NCBI GenBank assembly: GCA_002104945.1
Contig: MCFH01000092.1
Span: forward strand, 55,417 to 119,416
Direction: 5' to 3'
Origin: Piromyces finnis finn
Taxonomy: Eukaryota > Fungi > Neocallimastigomycota
Length of the DNA: 64,000 nucleotides
Position 1 is the first letter of the stretch. Each line of letters starts with the position of its first letter. The notes beneath the pieces were generated by a model that saw only the letters and a program-made list of their open reading frames with translations, was not told where the DNA came from and made no database searches. Positions 41,197 through 57,875 of the stretch are shown here, in pieces. Position numbers and translations under genes: made by a program.

Positions 41197-42168
41197 ATGA
41201 GTGGCTTCTTCAGATGGTATCATCGTTGTTTAAATACAAAACCACTTCTTACTCAATCACTCACCACTGGTAAATTTTAAATTTTGGGTTATATTTAAAT
41301 ATTTAAATATAGTGGTTGAATAAAATAAAAAATGGCAACACATTCTATTGAATATTTTTATATTTGAAGATAAATCATATATATTGATATACTTATTATT
41401 AATATATATATTTTTTAAAAAAATAAATAAATGAATTTCATTTTATTTTCAAAATCATATTTATAATTGTTGTAAATATTTTTAAATAATAAATGAATTT
41501 CATTTTATTTTCAAAATCATTATTAATAATTAAGGTGTAATGTTTGCAGTTGGTGATGTTATTGCTCAACAACTTGTTGAAAAAAGAGGAAAAGAACATG
41601 ACTACAAAAGAACAGGAAGAATGAGTTTATTTGGTGCTTGTGTTGCTGGTCCTTCAACATCTCTTTGGTATCGCTTTTTAGATAAATATATTGTTTTACC
41701 AAACAAAACTCATCGTAAGTTACTTTTAATATGAAGTTTTTTTTTTTTATATAATAATTATATATTATTCATTTTTTAAAGTAAAAAAAAAAAAAAAAAA
41801 AATACATTTCATGATAAAATTTAGAAATTTAAATTATTATTTATTATATATATTAAATAATTGTATCATCCATTTTTTATAATATAATATAATCAATAAT
41901 ATAATATGTAATATATTTATTTTATAATAATATTATTATAATTAATAATATTACTGTCTTTATAATTATGCTATTGGATTGCTATTTTGAAATTGCTTAT
42001 TTTGTCATTTTATTAGAACTTTTTGCAAGAGTTTTCTTAGACCAATGTGTTTATTCTCCACTTTCTCAAATTGTTTATCTTGGTGGTACTGGTGTTTTTG
42101 AAGGTAGTTCTCCAAAAGAAATAAAAGAAAAAATTAAAGTCGTAAGTAATTTATTTATTTCATTTCAT

Positions 42169-42235
<67 letters not shown>

Positions 42236-42677
42236 TTTTTTTTGCTTGTTTGTTTCAATATAAAGAGTTCAAGTTTGCATAACTTTCATTTTTCTAAACC
42301 AAAATAATAATAATAAATTTATGAGTTATATATTATTATTTATTCTTTATGATTTGAATTAAAAAAATTTTTTTTATTAAATATATATCTAATTATTCAT
42401 TTATCATAATATTCAATTTTTCATTTTTCTCATAAAGGGTTTTGGACCAGCTATTATGGCTAATTACAAGGTTTGGCCAGCATTCCAATTTATTAACTTT
42501 AATTTTGTTCCAGCAAATTACCGTTCATTAGGTACTAATGTAGTCGCTCTTGGTTGGAATACTTATTTATCTGTTTTAAATCAAAAGATTATCGATAGAA
42601 ATAAGACAGCTTCCTTATTACTCGCTGCAGATCCAAACAAGAAAGATTTAAAGAAAAAGAATGATAAGAAAAACTAA
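41197..42677 (+). CDS. MPV17: Mpv17/PMP22 family membrane protein (SYM1-like), 4 exons
   Basis: Exons 41197-41269, 41535-41714, 42017-42141 and 42438-42677 splice in frame with GT-AG. Motifs: WY...KPLLTQSLTTG, GDVIAQ, RTGRM, WYRFLD, FLDQ, NYKVWPAFQFINFNFVP. Confidence 0.9.
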
Positions 42678-43027
42678 AACTAAAAAAAAAAAATCAAATA
42701 AGAATTGATGATTTTTTTTTATAAATTCTATTATGATAAAAATATATTTATATTATATATGCTTATATAATGGAAATTCAAACATTTATTATTTATTTTT
42801 TTTAAGTAAAAAAGAGTAATAATAATAATGGTACAATTATATAAATATATTAATAATTGTAAATACTTTTCATATTTGTCTTCCTTAATATCAGAAACCT
42901 ATCTTTTTATTTAATCATATAATATAATATGAAAAAAAAAATAACTATTAAGCTAATTAAAACCCCCATTTCAACCAATTTTTTATAAATCAAGTATTTA
43001 TTATTTATTGTTGGTTTATAAAGGATA

Positions 43028-51552: not shown

Positions 51553-51967
51553 CGAGAATTTAACGACATTATTTTTATTTTAATGTTATCAAAAGATAAT
51601 TAATATCTATTAATTAATAGATTATTACCTTTATTAATTATAATTATATTTTTATAATCTATTTTATTTACTTTTTCATAAAATTATTGTTAGTAGTATT
51701 ATTTTATAAGTATCTTTTTTTATTTTTTTGTAATATCCAGGTATATTTTTTTAAAATAATAAGTTAAGTGAAAAATTAAATAGAAAAAAAAAAGCGTAAT
51801 GTAATTTAATTTTTAACTTTTTTTTGTTATTATGTATTGGTTATATTAAATATTTTTAATGACGATATAGTAAATTTTTGATTTATTTCTTTTATTCTAT
51901 TTAAGCTTGTTTCTATCAGTTGATATTATTATAATAAAGATATTTATATAACATCTTATAACAATGT

Positions 51968-54900
51968 CTATAATGGAGAATGCATACCCCTATTTATTTA
52001 AATAATTATAAATACATAAATAAATATAATTCTATTTTTACAATAAAAAATTATTTTTATTATATACTTACAACTAAATTTATTTTTATGTTTTTTTTTT
52101 TTTTTTTTTTTTTAATAAAAAAAAAATATTAGCATTGATTATATATATATAATTTTAGTATTAAGATATAAAATATAATTACCTTAGTATTAAATTCAAG
52201 TTTGGTTCTTTTTTGACATCTAGTATATTCTTTTCTATCCAGTTTTTTAGCAAATTCGTGAGCAGGAATAAGAGCAATTGGCCAAATAATAAATAATAAA
52301 TGATAATAAAATGGTATTTTTCCAAGTGAATTTTTAAATGTATCTTTCATATCTAAATTGATAAGGGTTATTCCAATATGTAAAATAAGCCTATTTTCAT
52401 AATATTTTAATAAATGATTTTAAATATTTTTTTTTCTTTTCCAATTCTTTTATAAAAAGTCATAATTAATATTCATTTATACATACATTAAAATTGATAC
52501 AATAAACCATTTGTGATTCATTATTGGTGAAACTTTAAATATACTTTGTGTACGATTAACAAATGTAGCTGATGTCCAAACTGCAATTATTGTTATTGTA
52601 AATATTTAATGATTTATATATATTAGTATTTTATAATAACTTTTGTAATTAATTTTTATAATAGTTATAATTATTTTGTTATTATTATTATTATATATAT
52701 ATACTATATACATACTAATGTAATAAACAAATAAAAATAGTGTTATAATTTGTGCATATTTTAAAGCATTTCTTGATTCCTCATCCCAATCTAAGAAAGA
52801 CTTATTATAAGTTTGATATATTTTAAATAATGAAAATGTATCACTTTCTTGTTTTAATAATCGAGTCAATATACTAAAAAAAATCATTATATATATAAAA
52901 GATTAATTAGGTTTACTTTTTCTTTTCTTATTTTTACTTCTACTACTATTATAATAATGATAGTAATATTAGTAATAATAATAAGTAAATAATTCATCCT
53001 TACATTTCAAAAGCTAATACAACCATAAGGATAATTAAGATAAATCGTATAATGAAATATCTATAAAATTTATTTTTATTTGTAATATGATTTTGATTCT
53101 TAGATGGCATTAAGGTCATTGTTTCAGGATCATGAGGTGTTGATAAAAGTGTTGCGGAAATGATAGGAAGAAATATCCATGATAACCAAATGATTTGCCA
53201 TGTAGTAAATAAAGGTGGATTTAAAAGCAAATATAAGAATATATAGCATATTGAAAGAGTTAATAATGAACCTAGTAATAAAAAGAAAGCATTAATCATA
53301 CTAATTTGTAATTCTCTTGATTCACGAATAATTTGTGTTAAAATATATAAACTAGAATCGGAATTCATAAATAAGGAGCATGGTAAACTAATGAAATCTG
53401 CAGCATAAGTTAATGGAGATTGTAAAGAAATTTGATTCTTTGATTTTGTTTGTTGTTTTGTGTGTAATGGTGCAATGGCTACGGAAACATCAGCCTATAT
53501 TATGTATATAATATATATATTTAAAAAAAAAAAATAATAATAAATTATTTTATTTCTATATAATATTTAGATATTATGAATAAAAATAAAAATATGATAA
53601 CATACAATTGCAAAAGATGAAATATTCTTAAAGTTAAGAGCACTACCAATACAACAAACAACTTCACCATTTTCTTGGAATATTTCAATTAATTCCTTTA
53701 TTGCATTAGGAGTACATTCAGCAAATAATGAAACATGTAATGGAATATCATCGACATTCTCAATATGGGATCTAATATTTTCTATACCTCTTGGTAATTG
53801 TGCTTTGATATCATGTAACTCTTGATAGCCGCTACTTTCACTATCAGATGATAAAAGAATGCAACTATTCCAATCAGTTTCAAGACCAATTCTTTCAGCA
53901 AAAGCTATTTAAAATAAATGCATTAAATACTGATATTTTATTTTTTATGTTTAATTTATAATATAATCTACTGGTATAAAAATATTTACCTTTACTTTCG
54001 CGTTCAGGTGCTGGTGATAAATAGACAAAACGAATACCAGCAAGACGAACATCTTCTACAAAATCTGACACATGCTATATAATATTATTGATAATAGCAA
54101 TAATAGTATTTAATATTGTTAATTATCATTATAAAGCAAAATAAATAATTTAAAATCAATCAATATATTTACTTGTTTTAAACGATGTGTTGCTAATGTA
54201 GCTAAACATAAAAATATTTGACTTCTTAAAATGTATGAATAAGGATTGGTTGAAATAACATCAATTGATTGTCTTCTATTATCTTCTTCACTGCCATATG
54301 ATACTATATTATTTGAATTTGATGCATTTGATAATGCTGTTGAAGTATTCAATAATTTATGTTTTGGTAGCATTTCAAAGAATAATGGTTTTTTATCAAA
54401 AGATGATAATTGGAAAATCTCTTCTCTATGAATTGGACGATAGGCATAAGTAATAATTTGGTTATCATTTGATGTTGCTGTTTGACAAAAATCGAGAATT
54501 TTCTTTTCAATCTAAATAACAGAATTTTAATATGGAAAGTATTAAATAATCTATTGGAATTGGAATATATCTACTACAATCTAGTGCTAATTTCATAATA
54601 AAACCACTTACATTTCTATCAATAGCACTTAAATCTTCACCATTCCAATAATCTAAACAGCAATCAAGAACCAATTCCACACTTCCGTCAGTTATTAATT
54701 GATAGCCAGAGGAAGCTTCTTCAAAAATTTGAGAAAACATATTTGGGACTTTGAAATGATAGTCAACCATTTTCTCTAAAGATGGATGGGATGGACTCAA
54801 TGTATATAATTGTTTTAATAGTTTAAATGATTTAATAACATCTACTGAAAACCCTATTTCTCTTCCTAGTCGACAAAGACATGCTATTTTAAATTTATAT

Positions 54901-57875
54901 ATTATAAATTTTGAATTTTTTCAATATATTTCATTAATATTATGTATATTGAAATCATTATTTTAGTACTACATCTATATATAATATATAAATATTTAAT
55001 TTACTTTGTCTGGCTGATTGGGTTCTACCACAAAAATGAAGACCCGATAATCTTCTATGAGGATCGTTTCTGATTTTACCTTCAGCAAATCCACAATTTG
55101 TATTCAATAATAAATTTAAACCTAATGGCTTTAATGAACTATGGAATATGAAAAGTAATAAAGTTTTATTAATTTCTAAAATATATATATAGCATTATTT
55201 TTTATCAATTCTTACGATAAATGATTATTCCAATCACTATCTTCAAAACGAATTCCATTTGGATTTTGTGAACTTTCTTCTACATCTAAAATTACTGATT
55301 TACCATCTTTATCAATAAAGAAAAGTTGTTCAATAGATGGGAAAGGCTTTAAAAATAATATAATAAATATTTAAAAGACATTTGAAATAAATACTTAATG
55401 TATATAAAAATTATAAATTTAAATAAAATAAAAATTATATTTTAGATAAAAAATATATACATATGATAATGTTCCTTCCTTATCTAATGCGCATATAACA
55501 GTAATACTACCAAGAGTATCAAGTAATGAAGAAGATCTTAATAAAGTTCCTTTCTTAGTTTTAAAAATGGATTGAGCATATTTTAAGACATCACCTATAT
55601 TTATTTATATATTTTATAATAAAAATAAATATAATTTAGCAAATTACTATTAAAAATAATAATATGTCACTATAAATATTATATTTTACCAAATGACACA
55701 TGAATATCTTTTGTTGGTGCTGGTGCTGGATCAAACTCATCAATATTTTCATCATCTTTATATTCATTTTTAGATTTTTTTAATTGTTCAAACATAAAAA
55801 GAATATGTGAGTTACCAAAAACATGAACCATTGTAAAACCAATAATCAATGGACTAAAAATCAATGGAATAAATGCTGAAAGTGGACGATAAAGAAAATA
55901 ATCGATAATAACATTTAATAAATTTTCTTTTAAATGGTTTCCGATGATTTCATATAAAAATCTTCCCAAAGCTATAGCTAATGCAATAATAAAATTATAT
56001 AAAAAGAAATGCGAGAATATTTCTCTTTTAATTATTCGCATTTGATGACCTAATGGGGGTGTAGGACGTTTGCTAGTAAAAATTGATTCCAATGAATTAT
56101 GAATTGGTGTTTCTAGTAATTCAAAAGTAAAAAGACTTGAATTAAATGTTGTTTCTTGTAAACCATCTTTAGCAACTTGAGATTCGAAAAAATTTGGTCT
56201 AAATTTCTGACGATTCTTAAGAATAGGGTTTTTCGGTATATAAGTTTTATTACGTTCGGACGGAACATATTTTGCATCACATGGAATTCTTTCCCCATAT
56301 GTAATTTCTACAATATCTCCTTTAACCAATAAAGAAACAGGGAATGTTTTACTTTTTCCATCTCGAATAACTCTTAATACTGAAACAGAATTAGTTGATG
56401 GAATACGAAGTTCCTAAATACAAATTAAAATTACAAATCACAAGTAAAATGATAATATATAATAATGTTATTATTATTAGAATTAAAATTGTAATATTTA
56501 TGGATTATTATTATTCTTTAATCTATTGTTATTGATATTTTTTATTTATATTATATATATAAATCTATTTAAATTGTTATTACTTGTATCATATTAATCC
56601 CTGAAGTCCTTATCTTAGTAAATACATATTTAGCCTTATTTACTAATTCTGAACAATATGCTTCCGTTTCATGTTTAATAATAATGATATTTAAAAACAT
56701 CCAAAAAGTTAACAAAATAGTCTCGATTAGATATTCTATACTATAGTGTAATGATTTTTGCTTAATGGTTGAAGTAATAAAAAGAAATATAAATACAATA
56801 ATGGTTATAAGTTGTAATAAAGTGATAATAATAAATGCTTTATTTGTTAATATTTCTATTTAAAATATATTAATAAATATATCATTAGATATATATGTTA
56901 TCATTTGATGGTGTTTATTTTTTTATTAAATACTAATTCTTACTCCTTTTTTTTTGTTCATTATTATTTATTCTTTCTTCTTCCAATAACAAACGACTAT
57001 ATAAAATATTTTAATAAAAAATAAAATATTGATTAATTTATAAATTTTATATTACATTATTATGTCTTATTAAAATAATACAAAATAATATTTAGGAAAA
57101 ATATGTACTTTAAAGCTTCTTCGCTACTTAAACCCTTAACTTCATTAATATATTCATCTGGTGATAGAAATGTTGGTGTTTTCTGTTTTAATAATTTTGA
57201 TGGTAATCTATTTTTATTTTTTTTTTGCTTAATTGACAGCATTGCCTTTGACGATAATGATTTTGAAGTGTTATTTAGTTTTGCTTTGGACAATATATTA
57301 CTTTTGTTACGTCTTGATTTTGGAGGTGCACTTAAATTTGAATATTTAGCATTACTAACTGATTGATTTAACGATGATGCTGTATTTGAAAAATCCGCCA
57401 TATCATCTACTGAAGAGCTTTTATTATTAAATTCTGTTAATTCTATATCTATTTCATCCTTAAATCTTGATGGTGATTCGCATAAATAATCTGAGTTTAT
57501 AATACTATTATCTATATCTAGAGAGTTTACGTTTTTACTTTCTTTATTTTCATTTAAAGATTTATCTTTCTTCAGTTTGTCTTTTTTCTTTGTTTTTTTT
57601 TTTTTTATAGTAATATCTTCTTCATCTGACCCATCAATTGAAATAGCTTCATATGCTATTTGAGTTAAAGGCGTTGGAACTTTGACCTGCGAACCTGAAG
57701 AAGTTCTTGAAATATTAATTTTTAAAGGAGGAGATGAGCTATTTATATTTTCTCCCTCATTTATATTAATTACATGGGAATGTGAACCAGATTTCGATAA
57801 AGCAATATTTGATGAATCAAAAGATGAATTTTCATTTGAATCATTAGAATTAGTTAATGGAGAGGTTGAAGACAT
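51968..57875 (-). CDS. TMEM94: TMEM94/KIAA0195 (ERMA) P-type-ATPase-like membrane protein, 17 exons, ~1394 aa
   Basis: Exons: 57875-57109, 56996-56944, 56855-56584, 56413-55690, 55594-55461, 55346-55216, 55138-55005, 54883-54612, 54511-54173, 54074-53990, 53904-53606, 53494-53004, 52873-52716, 52580-52487, 52390-52183, 52073-52072, 51989-51968. Motifs: VKGDIV...GERIPC, LGSITVICALDKEGTLS, SLKPLGLNLLLN, CLCRLGREIGF, GLETDWNSCILLS, LFAECTP...GEVVCCIGS, KLEFNTKLGMHSP. Confidence 0.9.
52072..52073 (-). other. Predicted 2-nt coding microexon (TT) of TMEM94
   Basis: The minus strand reads aatttAG|TT|GTAAGT. Including it joins phase 0 to phase 2 and restores TKLGMxSP. Confidence 0.8.

What the first reader, a model, noticed from the sequence alone, without database searches (positions are those of the whole stretch)
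51897..52185. A 2-nucleotide microexon appears necessary to build the conserved TMEM94 C-terminus
Seen (minus strand): exon 15 ends ...AAT ACT AAG|gtaatt (phase 0), but the last exon starts tag|G GGT ATG CAT TCT CCA TTA TAG (phase 2). Between them lies aatttAG|TT|GTAAGT at 52073-52072, flanked by 109-nt and 82-nt introns with a perfect donor. Inclusion gives K-L(TT+G)-G-M-H-S-P-L*, matching the TKLGMxSP end I recall for animal TMEM94. Skipping gives an open 30-aa hydrophobic tail, GYAFSIIDIVIRCYINIFIIIISTDRNKLK*. Inference: an extreme microexon that standard gene finders and aligners would miss, and a possible frame switch between two C-termini.
Basis: partly seen in the sequence, partly recalled or inferred. 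Interest (0 to 1): 0.8.

Follow-up and report, generated by a model that had tools for sequence, protein, structure and literature searches.

The report
Two-base exon in fungal TMEM94 gene
An anaerobic gut fungus almost certainly uses an exon only two bases long to keep the conserved last seven amino acids of its TMEM94/ERMA-type membrane pump. The exon exists because two introns that other fungi carry singly, two bases apart, are both present here.

Summary
On the minus strand the exon ends AAG at 52183, then come a 109-nt intron, tttAG|TT|GTAAGT (TT at 52073-52072) and an 82-nt intron. The last coding piece G GGT ATG CAT TCT CCA TTA TAG runs 51989-51968.

Every full-length homologue, fungal or animal TMEM94, ends exactly seven residues after the ...EF(N/S)TK match. 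The tail is LGMHSPL in fungi and LGMNSPF in animals. Only inclusion of TT gives that tail here.

- A related fungus on metagenome contigs keeps TAG|TT|GTAAGTAT and the identical last piece. Its introns differ in length and cannot otherwise be aligned.
- A spliced mRNA contig of a third relative reads AAA TTG GGT ATG...TAA.
- Each flanking intron has a counterpart elsewhere. The phase-0 K|L intron is in Mucoromycota. The phase-2 intron inside the Leu codon is in three chytrids.

The proposed switch between two C-termini has no support.

This is a new member of a known kind: 1-nt exons are published for plants and Fusarium. This scan also noted another 2-nt exon (histone H1) elsewhere in this genome.

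The parts
51968..57875 (-). Multi-exon gene for a TMEM94/ERMA-type P-type-ATPase-like membrane protein. The start is the ATG at 57875 and the stop TAG ends at 51968.
   Evidence: The gene is colinear with the fungal homologue P0020 and with the mRNA contig L012. The only PDB matches are TMEM94/ERMA chains, at E about 1e-13. It is single copy in G000.
52183..52392 (-). Penultimate coding exon. It encodes ...KIPFYYHLLFIIWPIALIPAHEFAKKLDRKEYTRCQKRTKLEFNTK and ends in phase 0 after AAG.
   Evidence: It matches the C-terminal region of homologues up to the residue 7 before their ends.
52074..52182 (-). Intron 1, 109 nt, GTAATT...TTTAG. It is a phase-0 intron between Lys and Leu and contains an A23 run at 52113-52091.
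   Evidence: The same position holds the sole intron in Umbelopsis vinacea (L020) and in three Mucoromycota-like contigs (L013, L014, L016).
52072..52073 (-). The 2-nt exon TT. These are the first two bases of the Leu codon TTG.
   Evidence: It is conserved as TAG|TT|GTAAGTAT in the relative at L002:3661-3662. The shuffle test gave 0 of 2000. The mRNA contig L012 has TTG at this codon.
51990..52071 (-). Intron 2, 82 nt, GTAAGT...AAATAG. It is a phase-2 intron inside the Leu codon.
   Evidence: The same position and phase hold the sole intron in Geranomyces (L017), Polychytrium (L019) and Spizellomyces (L022).
51968..51989 (-). Terminal coding piece G GGT ATG CAT TCT CCA TTA TAG. It supplies the third base of Leu, then G-M-H-S-P-L and the stop.
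   Evidence: All 22 nt are identical in the relative L002:3782-3803, and the sequences diverge straight after the TAG. The tail equals that of the fungal homologues.

Best explanation
The TT at 52073-52072 (minus strand) is a real spliceosomal exon two bases long. It is used constitutively or predominantly.

The primary transcript carries two complete canonical GT-AG introns of 109 and 82 nt, separated by only these two bases. Removing both joins ...ACT AAG + TT + G GGT ATG CAT TCT CCA TTA TAG. The protein then ends ...EFNTK-LGMHSPL. This is the invariant extreme C-terminus of the TMEM94/ERMA family; the animal version, LGMNSPF, holds what the literature calls the C-terminal GMN motif.

The microexon exists because this lineage carries both of two intron positions that other fungi carry singly:
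- a phase-0 intron between Lys and Leu, as in Mucoromycota;
- a phase-2 intron after the second base of the Leu codon, as in several chytrids.

Inferred, not shown: a 3' splice site and a 5' splice site two bases apart can hardly be occupied at once. The two introns are therefore probably removed one after the other by intron definition, much as at a recursive splice site. The perfect GTAAGT donor of intron 2 compensates for the lack of exon context.
For: Sequence anatomy.

Family tail:
- An exhaustive HMMER search with the penultimate exon found 8 full-length homologues. Each ends exactly 7 residues past the match, with LGMHSPL, LGLHSP(L/V/I) or LGMNSPF.
- Further fungal and animal tails agree.

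A second genome:
- P0101 (84% identical) lies on 19 metagenome contigs; the ten fetched are identical over this region, so they count as one relative.
- It has AAA|GTAAAT, a 138-nt intron, TATAG|TT|GTAAGTAT, a 119-nt intron, and AAATAG followed by the same 22-nt terminal piece.
- The best shared substring of the two intronic regions is exactly TAGTTGTAAGTAT: 25.3 bits against 14.2 +/- 1.8 in 2000 shuffles, maximum 23.1.
- The 3' flank diverges directly after the TAG.

mRNA: L012 is a 4642-nt metatranscriptome contig of a third relative. It is intronless across at least six of the window's intron positions and reads NTK-TTG-GGT-ATG...TAA.

Orthologous single introns: phase 0 in L013, L014, L016 and L020; phase 2 in L017, L019 and L022.

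Rarity of the motif.

Expression hint: the best runs hold 0.57 and 0.50 of the sampled words of 51700-53400. That is close to the share of 31-mers lying wholly in exons, about 0.53, and far from the 1.0 expected of genomic DNA.
Against:
- The conserved genomic structure rests on one independent relative.
- The genome of the species that gave the mRNA contig is not in hand, so its TTG might lie in an ordinary exon.
- Intron 2 of the window has no clear CTRAY-like branch motif by eye. The branch consensus of this group was not established here.
- How much skipping or retention occurs is unknown.
Confidence: 0.85

Rival explanations
1. There is one 193-nt intron from 52182 to 51990 and TT is just intron sequence. 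The protein then ends in the 30-aa hydrophobic tail GYAFS...NKLK*. This form might be the only product, or a regulated alternative to the conserved tail.
For: Donor 52182 and acceptor 51990 are both canonical, and the frame stays open for 30 codons. Nothing here measures isoform ratios, because no reads were laid.
Against: - The skipped-frame tail is not conserved. In the relative it is 9 aa (GYAFSIIGF*), because the sequences diverge right after the in-frame TAG of the other frame.
- No homologue carries such a tail.
- It leaves the conserved TAGTTGTAAGTAT island unexplained.
- It also leaves unexplained the exact LGMHSPL* coding in the other frame.
Confidence: 0.06
2. The transcript is only partly spliced and the conserved tail is not made. 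Two forms are possible. Retention of intron 1 gives ...NTKVIIFYILILKLYIYNQC*. Removal of intron 1 with retention of intron 2 gives TTG TAA, that is ...NTKL*, lacking only GMHSPL.
For: Both readings hit a stop quickly. Public gene models of other fungi end this way: P0059 and P0032 end ...TKL.
Against: - Those public models are annotation failures. In Spizellomyces the missed terminal piece lies right behind a canonical intron.
- The terminal 22 nt and its stop are identical between two species while all surrounding non-coding sequence has diverged.
- The mRNA of a relative encodes the full tail.
- A minor retained fraction cannot be excluded.
Confidence: 0.06
3. The frame break is an artefact or is healed some other way. 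Possibilities are an assembly indel at a splice site, a non-canonical junction (for example GT...AT two bases upstream, giving K-R-G-M), or a +1 ribosomal frameshift.
For: Nothing specific. These are the generic alternatives to any frame break between exons.
Against: - An independent assembly of a different species, seen on 19 contigs from many samples, has the same layout.
- The alternatives would give K-R-G-M, K-V-G-M or K-G-M instead of the invariant K-L-G-M.
- None of them explains the conserved AG|TT|GTAAGT island.
Confidence: 0.03

Closest known systems
One-nucleotide exons: Arabidopsis APC11 (PMC4674806), plant APC11 and VPS55 clusters (PMC8831610), Fusarium CYP621A (PMC12940212)
   Same: - An exon of fewer than 3 nt is flanked by two canonical introns.
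- It is needed to keep a conserved motif in frame, and its splice sites are conserved between species.
- It is missed by annotation and by read mappers.
- For VPS55 the paper stresses a well-conserved GTRAGT donor after the microexon. Here too the donor is a perfect GTAAGT.
   Different: - Here the exon is 2 nt, lies in the last codons of the gene, and is in an early-diverging anaerobic fungus.
- Its origin can be read from relatives: two introns attested separately in other phyla co-occur here. The Fusarium paper instead proposes rescue of a lost base by a cryptic exon.
- Those published cases have RNA proof from the organism itself; this one does not yet.
Recursive splice sites (ratchet points, juxtaposed AG|GTAAGT) of long Drosophila and vertebrate introns (from general knowledge)
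   Same: A 3' splice site is followed almost at once by a strong 5' splice site, so removal must be stepwise. After the first step the upstream exon is joined to a regenerated donor.
   Different: At a recursive site no nucleotide is kept, so the exon has zero length, and the introns are very long. Here two nucleotides stay in the mRNA and are coding, and the introns are about 100 nt.
Spliceosomal twin introns (stwintrons) of filamentous fungi (from general knowledge)
   Same: Two fungal introns sit in immediate contact and probably need ordered removal.
   Different: In a stwintron the inner intron interrupts a splice signal of the outer one, and nothing between them remains in the mRNA. Here both introns have complete GT...AG signals in the primary transcript, and TT is retained.
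TMEM94 / ERMA (human structures 9ywq, 9jjk; PMC13322241, PMC12134183)
   Same: - The host gene is a homologue. Its only PDB hits are TMEM94/ERMA chains.
- Loop variants are similar: DKEGTL here against DKQGIL, and GSALNF against GSSANL.
- The C-terminus is equally placed: TKLGM(H/N)SP plus one residue.
   Different: - The fungal tail is GMH, not GMN.
- The N-terminus has a 270-aa low-complexity extension.
- The biochemical role of the family is itself disputed between the two papers. Nothing about function was tested here.

Membership tests
Ultra-short (<=3 nt) spliceosomal microexon | AG acceptor directly upstream and GT donor directly downstream, each closing or opening a complete intron | tested here: met
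   The layout is GTAATT...TTTAG|TT|GTAAGT...AAATAG, with introns of 109 and 82 nt.
Ultra-short (<=3 nt) spliceosomal microexon | Inclusion, and only inclusion, restores the frame to a conserved protein sequence | tested here: met
   AAG+TT+G GGT ATG... gives K-LGMHSPL*. This is identical to the fungal homologues and 7 residues long, as in all full-length hits. Skipping or retention gives unconserved tails.
Ultra-short (<=3 nt) spliceosomal microexon | The microexon and its splice sites are conserved in related genomes while the introns diverge | tested here: met
   The relative has TATAG|TT|GTAAGTAT at L002:3661-3662 with introns of 138 and 119 nt. The shuffle test gave 0 of 2000. This is only one independent relative.
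Ultra-short (<=3 nt) spliceosomal microexon | cDNA or junction reads from the same organism contain the microexon | not testable with these tools
The nearest substitute is the mRNA contig of a relative, which has TTG at the junction.
TMEM94 / ERMA family | Sequence homology to TMEM94 over the membrane and cytosolic domains | tested here: met
   - The exon 53006-53494 hits only TMEM94/ERMA chains in the PDB, at E 1e-13.
- Animal 'Transmembrane protein 94' proteins are retrieved and align to several exons at 25-37% identity.
- Pfam gives only weak E1-E2_ATPase and Cation_ATPase_C hits, below the cut-offs.
TMEM94 / ERMA family | A non-canonical phosphorylation loop (DKQGIL in human, in place of DKTGT), and GSSANL in place of GDGVND (PMC13322241) | tested here: inconclusive
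   The window reads ...ALDKEGTLS... and ...CCIGSALNFKN... in the corresponding exons. These are similar but not identical. No residue-by-residue alignment to the human protein was made.
TMEM94 / ERMA family | [quoted passage not shown] | tested here: met
   Animals end TKLGMNSPF and fungi end TKLGMHSP(L/V). The window's last piece encodes GMHSPL*. This is the fungal GMH variant at the same place.
Recursive splice site (zero-length exon) | The 3' and 5' splice sites are directly juxtaposed, and no nucleotide is retained in the mRNA | tested here: not met
   Two nucleotides lie between the AG and the GT, and they are needed for the Leu codon. The site works like a recursive site but is not one.
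Stwintron | An inner intron interrupts a splice signal of the outer intron, which becomes functional only after the first excision | tested here: not met
   Both introns have intact GT and AG ends in the genomic sequence.

The most novel reading that the evidence does not exclude
Anaerobic gut fungi may tolerate exons of 1-3 nt as a regular feature of their genomes. Such exons would arise where a lineage-specific intron lands next to an older one.

This locus shows directly that intron positions 2 nt apart in different phyla are independent introns that can co-exist in one gene. Such near-coincident positions are usually attributed to intron sliding.

A further twist: leaving intron 2 in place gives ...NTKL*. 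That removes only the GMH tail, so splicing of the last intron could tune the presence of the family's C-terminal motif.
Probability: 0.3. Interest if true: 0.65.

Novelty: new member of a known kind. Interest (0 to 1): 0.5.

Why it matters
- **Annotation.** Without the 2-nt exon the gene model loses the one stretch of this protein that is invariant from fungi to animals. The literature discusses this C-terminal GMN/GMH motif of TMEM94/ERMA as a regulatory or Mg-related site. A public Spizellomyces model already shows such a truncation.
- **Splicing.** The locus adds a 2-nt case in an early-diverging fungus with short AT-rich introns, beside the few published 1-nt exons. That makes it a useful test bed for how adjacent 3' and 5' splice sites are used in turn.
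- **Intron evolution.** The locus is a natural experiment. The same Lys-Leu junction carries no intron, a phase-0 intron, a phase-2 intron or both, in different fungal lineages. This argues for two independent introns rather than one intron that slid.
- **Read mapping.** Standard aligners will report this junction as a single intron with a mismatch or a 2-nt insertion, so such exons are systematically under-counted.

Tried and rejected
The exon holding them was left out of alignments and searches and was blanked in the local comparison.
  - Searches were local scripts that read or compared the window file as a whole.
- **Word search with an alignment of P0020 plus separate window exons.** It returned only Mortierellomycota and a few animal TMEM94 proteins. 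The words evidently came from the first row.
- **Word search of the P0020 C-terminal region.** It returned fungal homologues but nothing close to the window.
- **The window organism's own annotated protein.** It never appeared, so whether the public model has the right end could not be checked.
- **P0094 (ant TMEM94).** It was not on record for a locus, so animal intron positions were not examined.
- **PDB search with the 70-aa penultimate exon.** It found nothing.
- **The joined step.** All searches used single exons by reference.
- **Rejected readings.** These are the single 193-nt intron, partial splicing, an assembly indel, a non-canonical junction and frameshifting (see rivals).

Full report
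**What is in the sequence**

Read on the minus strand (positions computed):
- The last large coding exon ends ...GAA TTT AAT ACT AAG at 52183 and is followed by GTAATT.
- 109 nt further on lies TTTAG|TT|GTAAGT, with TT at 52073-52072.
- After another 82 nt comes AAATAG, followed at 51989-51968 by G GGT ATG CAT TCT CCA TTA TAG.

The motif is not a common accident:
- GTAAGT occurs six times on this strand of the window.
- AG-NN-GTAAGT occurs twice on both strands. The other case is an ordinary exon end of a plus-strand gene.
- The only other GTAAGT inside this gene, at 54611, is itself a donor.

**The gene and the organism**

The gene runs from the ATG at 57875 to the TAG ending at 51968 and has about 16 exons.
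- Pfam gives only weak P-type ATPase hits.
- One exon hits nothing in the PDB except TMEM94/ERMA chains, at E about 1e-13.
- Word searches retrieve fungal 'cation-transporting P-type ATPase' proteins and animal 'transmembrane protein 94'.
- The gene is single copy.

The assembly has 56,455,805 bases in 232 contigs, and non-coding DNA is 12-16% G+C. From memory this fits the anaerobic gut fungus Piromyces finnis. Earlier notes of this scan use the same name. I did not test the name.

**Is the tail really conserved?**

An exhaustive HMMER search with the penultimate exon found eight full-length homologues. In each one the match ends exactly seven residues before the C-terminus.
- Those seven residues are LGMHSPL, LGLHSP(L/V/I) or, in animals, LGMNSPF.
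- The window's last piece encodes (L)GMHSPL followed by a stop.

**A second genome**

The word search with the exon found P0101, which is 84% identical. It lies on 19 metagenome contigs. The ten fetched are identical over this region, so they count as one relative.
- There the exon ends AAA|GTAAAT.
- A 138-nt intron ends TATAG, followed by TT and GTAAGTAT.
- A 119-nt intron ends AAATAG, and the same 22 nt follow.

The introns differ in length and cannot be aligned. The highest-scoring shared substring of the two intronic regions is exactly TAGTTGTAAGTAT: 25.3 bits against 14.2 +/- 1.8 in 2000 shuffles, none reaching it.

Directly after the TAG the two species diverge. This fits the frame that ends there. 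It does not fit the skipped frame, which gives 30 aa here and 9 aa in the relative.

**An mRNA**

L012 comes from a 4642-nt metatranscriptome contig of a third relative, 82% identical.
- It is colinear with the window's exons and has no introns.
- It reads AAT ACC AAA TTG GGT ATG CAT TCA CCT TTA TAA.

So the mature message of this fungal group encodes K-L-G-M-H-S-P-L, with TTG for Leu.

**Where the microexon comes from**

| Lineage (locus) | Structure at the Lys-Leu junction |
|---|---|
| Umbelopsis vinacea (L020); three Mucoromycota-like contigs (L013, L014, L016) | One phase-0 intron: AAG\|GTAA...AG\|CT(C/T) GG(T/G) ATG |
| Geranomyces (L017), Polychytrium (L019) | One phase-2 intron inside the Leu codon: AAG CT\|GTAAGT...AG\|(G/C) GGC ATG |
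| Spizellomyces (L022) | Same phase-2 intron: AAG TT\|GTGAGT...AG\|G GGG ATG |
| Rhizoclosmatium (L018), Globomyces (L023), Rhizophagus (L021) | No intron |
| The window and its relative (L002) | Both introns, hence a 2-nt exon |

The public Spizellomyces model P0059 ends ...NTKL because TT|GTGAGT was read as TTG TGA. This shows how easily annotation loses this end.

**How it most likely works**

- Shown: two complete canonical introns sit 2 nt apart, and the result is needed for a conserved tail.
- Inferred: splice-site factors cannot sit on an AG and a GT two bases apart at the same time. The introns are therefore removed in turn by intron definition, as at recursive splice sites, except that two coding bases are kept.
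- The perfect GTAAGT donor may compensate for the missing exon context. The other donors in the gene are mostly GTAAAT, GTAATT or GTAAGA. The same point is made for plant 1-nt exons (PMC8831610).
- If intron 2 alone stayed in, the message would read TTG TAA, that is ...NTKL*.

**What is missing**

No RNA of this organism was read across the junction.
- The look-up of sequencing runs listed four runs. The best two hold 0.57 and 0.50 of the sampled words of 51700-53400. That is close to the share of 31-mers lying wholly in exons, about 0.53. It suggests transcript assemblies and expression, but no more.
- Those places were sent to no search tool afterwards.

**Comparison and novelty**

- Exons of 1 nt are published for Arabidopsis APC11 (PMC4674806), plant VPS55 (PMC8831610) and Fusarium CYP621A (PMC12940212).
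- This scan has also noted a 2-nt exon in histone H1 and several 3-nt exons elsewhere in this genome (not checked by me).

The kind is therefore known, and this is a new member. Two features stand out: its place at the very end of a TMEM94/ERMA gene, and an origin that can be read from relatives.

Confidence that the microexon is real and is the main form is 0.85.

Noticed in passing
L022:5044-5140 (Spizellomyces sp. 'palustris', NCBI record): The public protein model P0059 ends ...NTKL because the donor TT|GTGAGT is read as TTG TGA. A canonical intron follows, and then the piece G GGG ATG CAC TCG CCA CTA TGA, which encodes the conserved tail. The last exon was missed by the annotation.
   Followed up: partly
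window 52071-52066 (-): If intron 1 is removed but intron 2 is kept, the message reads TTG TAA. The protein then ends ...NTKL* and lacks only GMHSPL. The same holds for the chytrid genes (CTG TAA). Whether such a form is made is unknown.
   Followed up: no
window 52091-52113 (-): A run of 23 A lies inside intron 1, preceded by a T-rich stretch. It could cause internal oligo-dT priming on unspliced RNA, or breaks in assemblies.
   Followed up: no
window 57060-57875 (-): The first exon encodes about 270 residues of Ser/Asn/Lys-rich low-complexity sequence. It has no Pfam hit and no counterpart in the homologues aligned.
   Followed up: no
window 54512-54611 (-): GTAAGT at 54611 sits in an open frame but is a real donor. 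The relative's mRNA joins ...IDKN (window ...IDRN) directly to IEKKILDF, so about 100 nt of open frame here is intron.
   Followed up: partly
window 41540-42680 (+): A small plus-strand gene has at least three exons ending in GTAAGT donors, at 41715 and 42142. The AG-TC-GTAAGT at 42138-42147 is its ordinary exon end, not a microexon. The intron after it holds long (ATT)n, (AT)n and T runs.
   Followed up: partly
window 51700-53400, runs X1-X4: The four listed runs are labelled only as guessed RNA. They hold 0.33-0.57 of the sampled words, and the top values are close to the exonic share of about 0.53. This suggests they are transcript assemblies and that the gene is expressed.
   Followed up: partly
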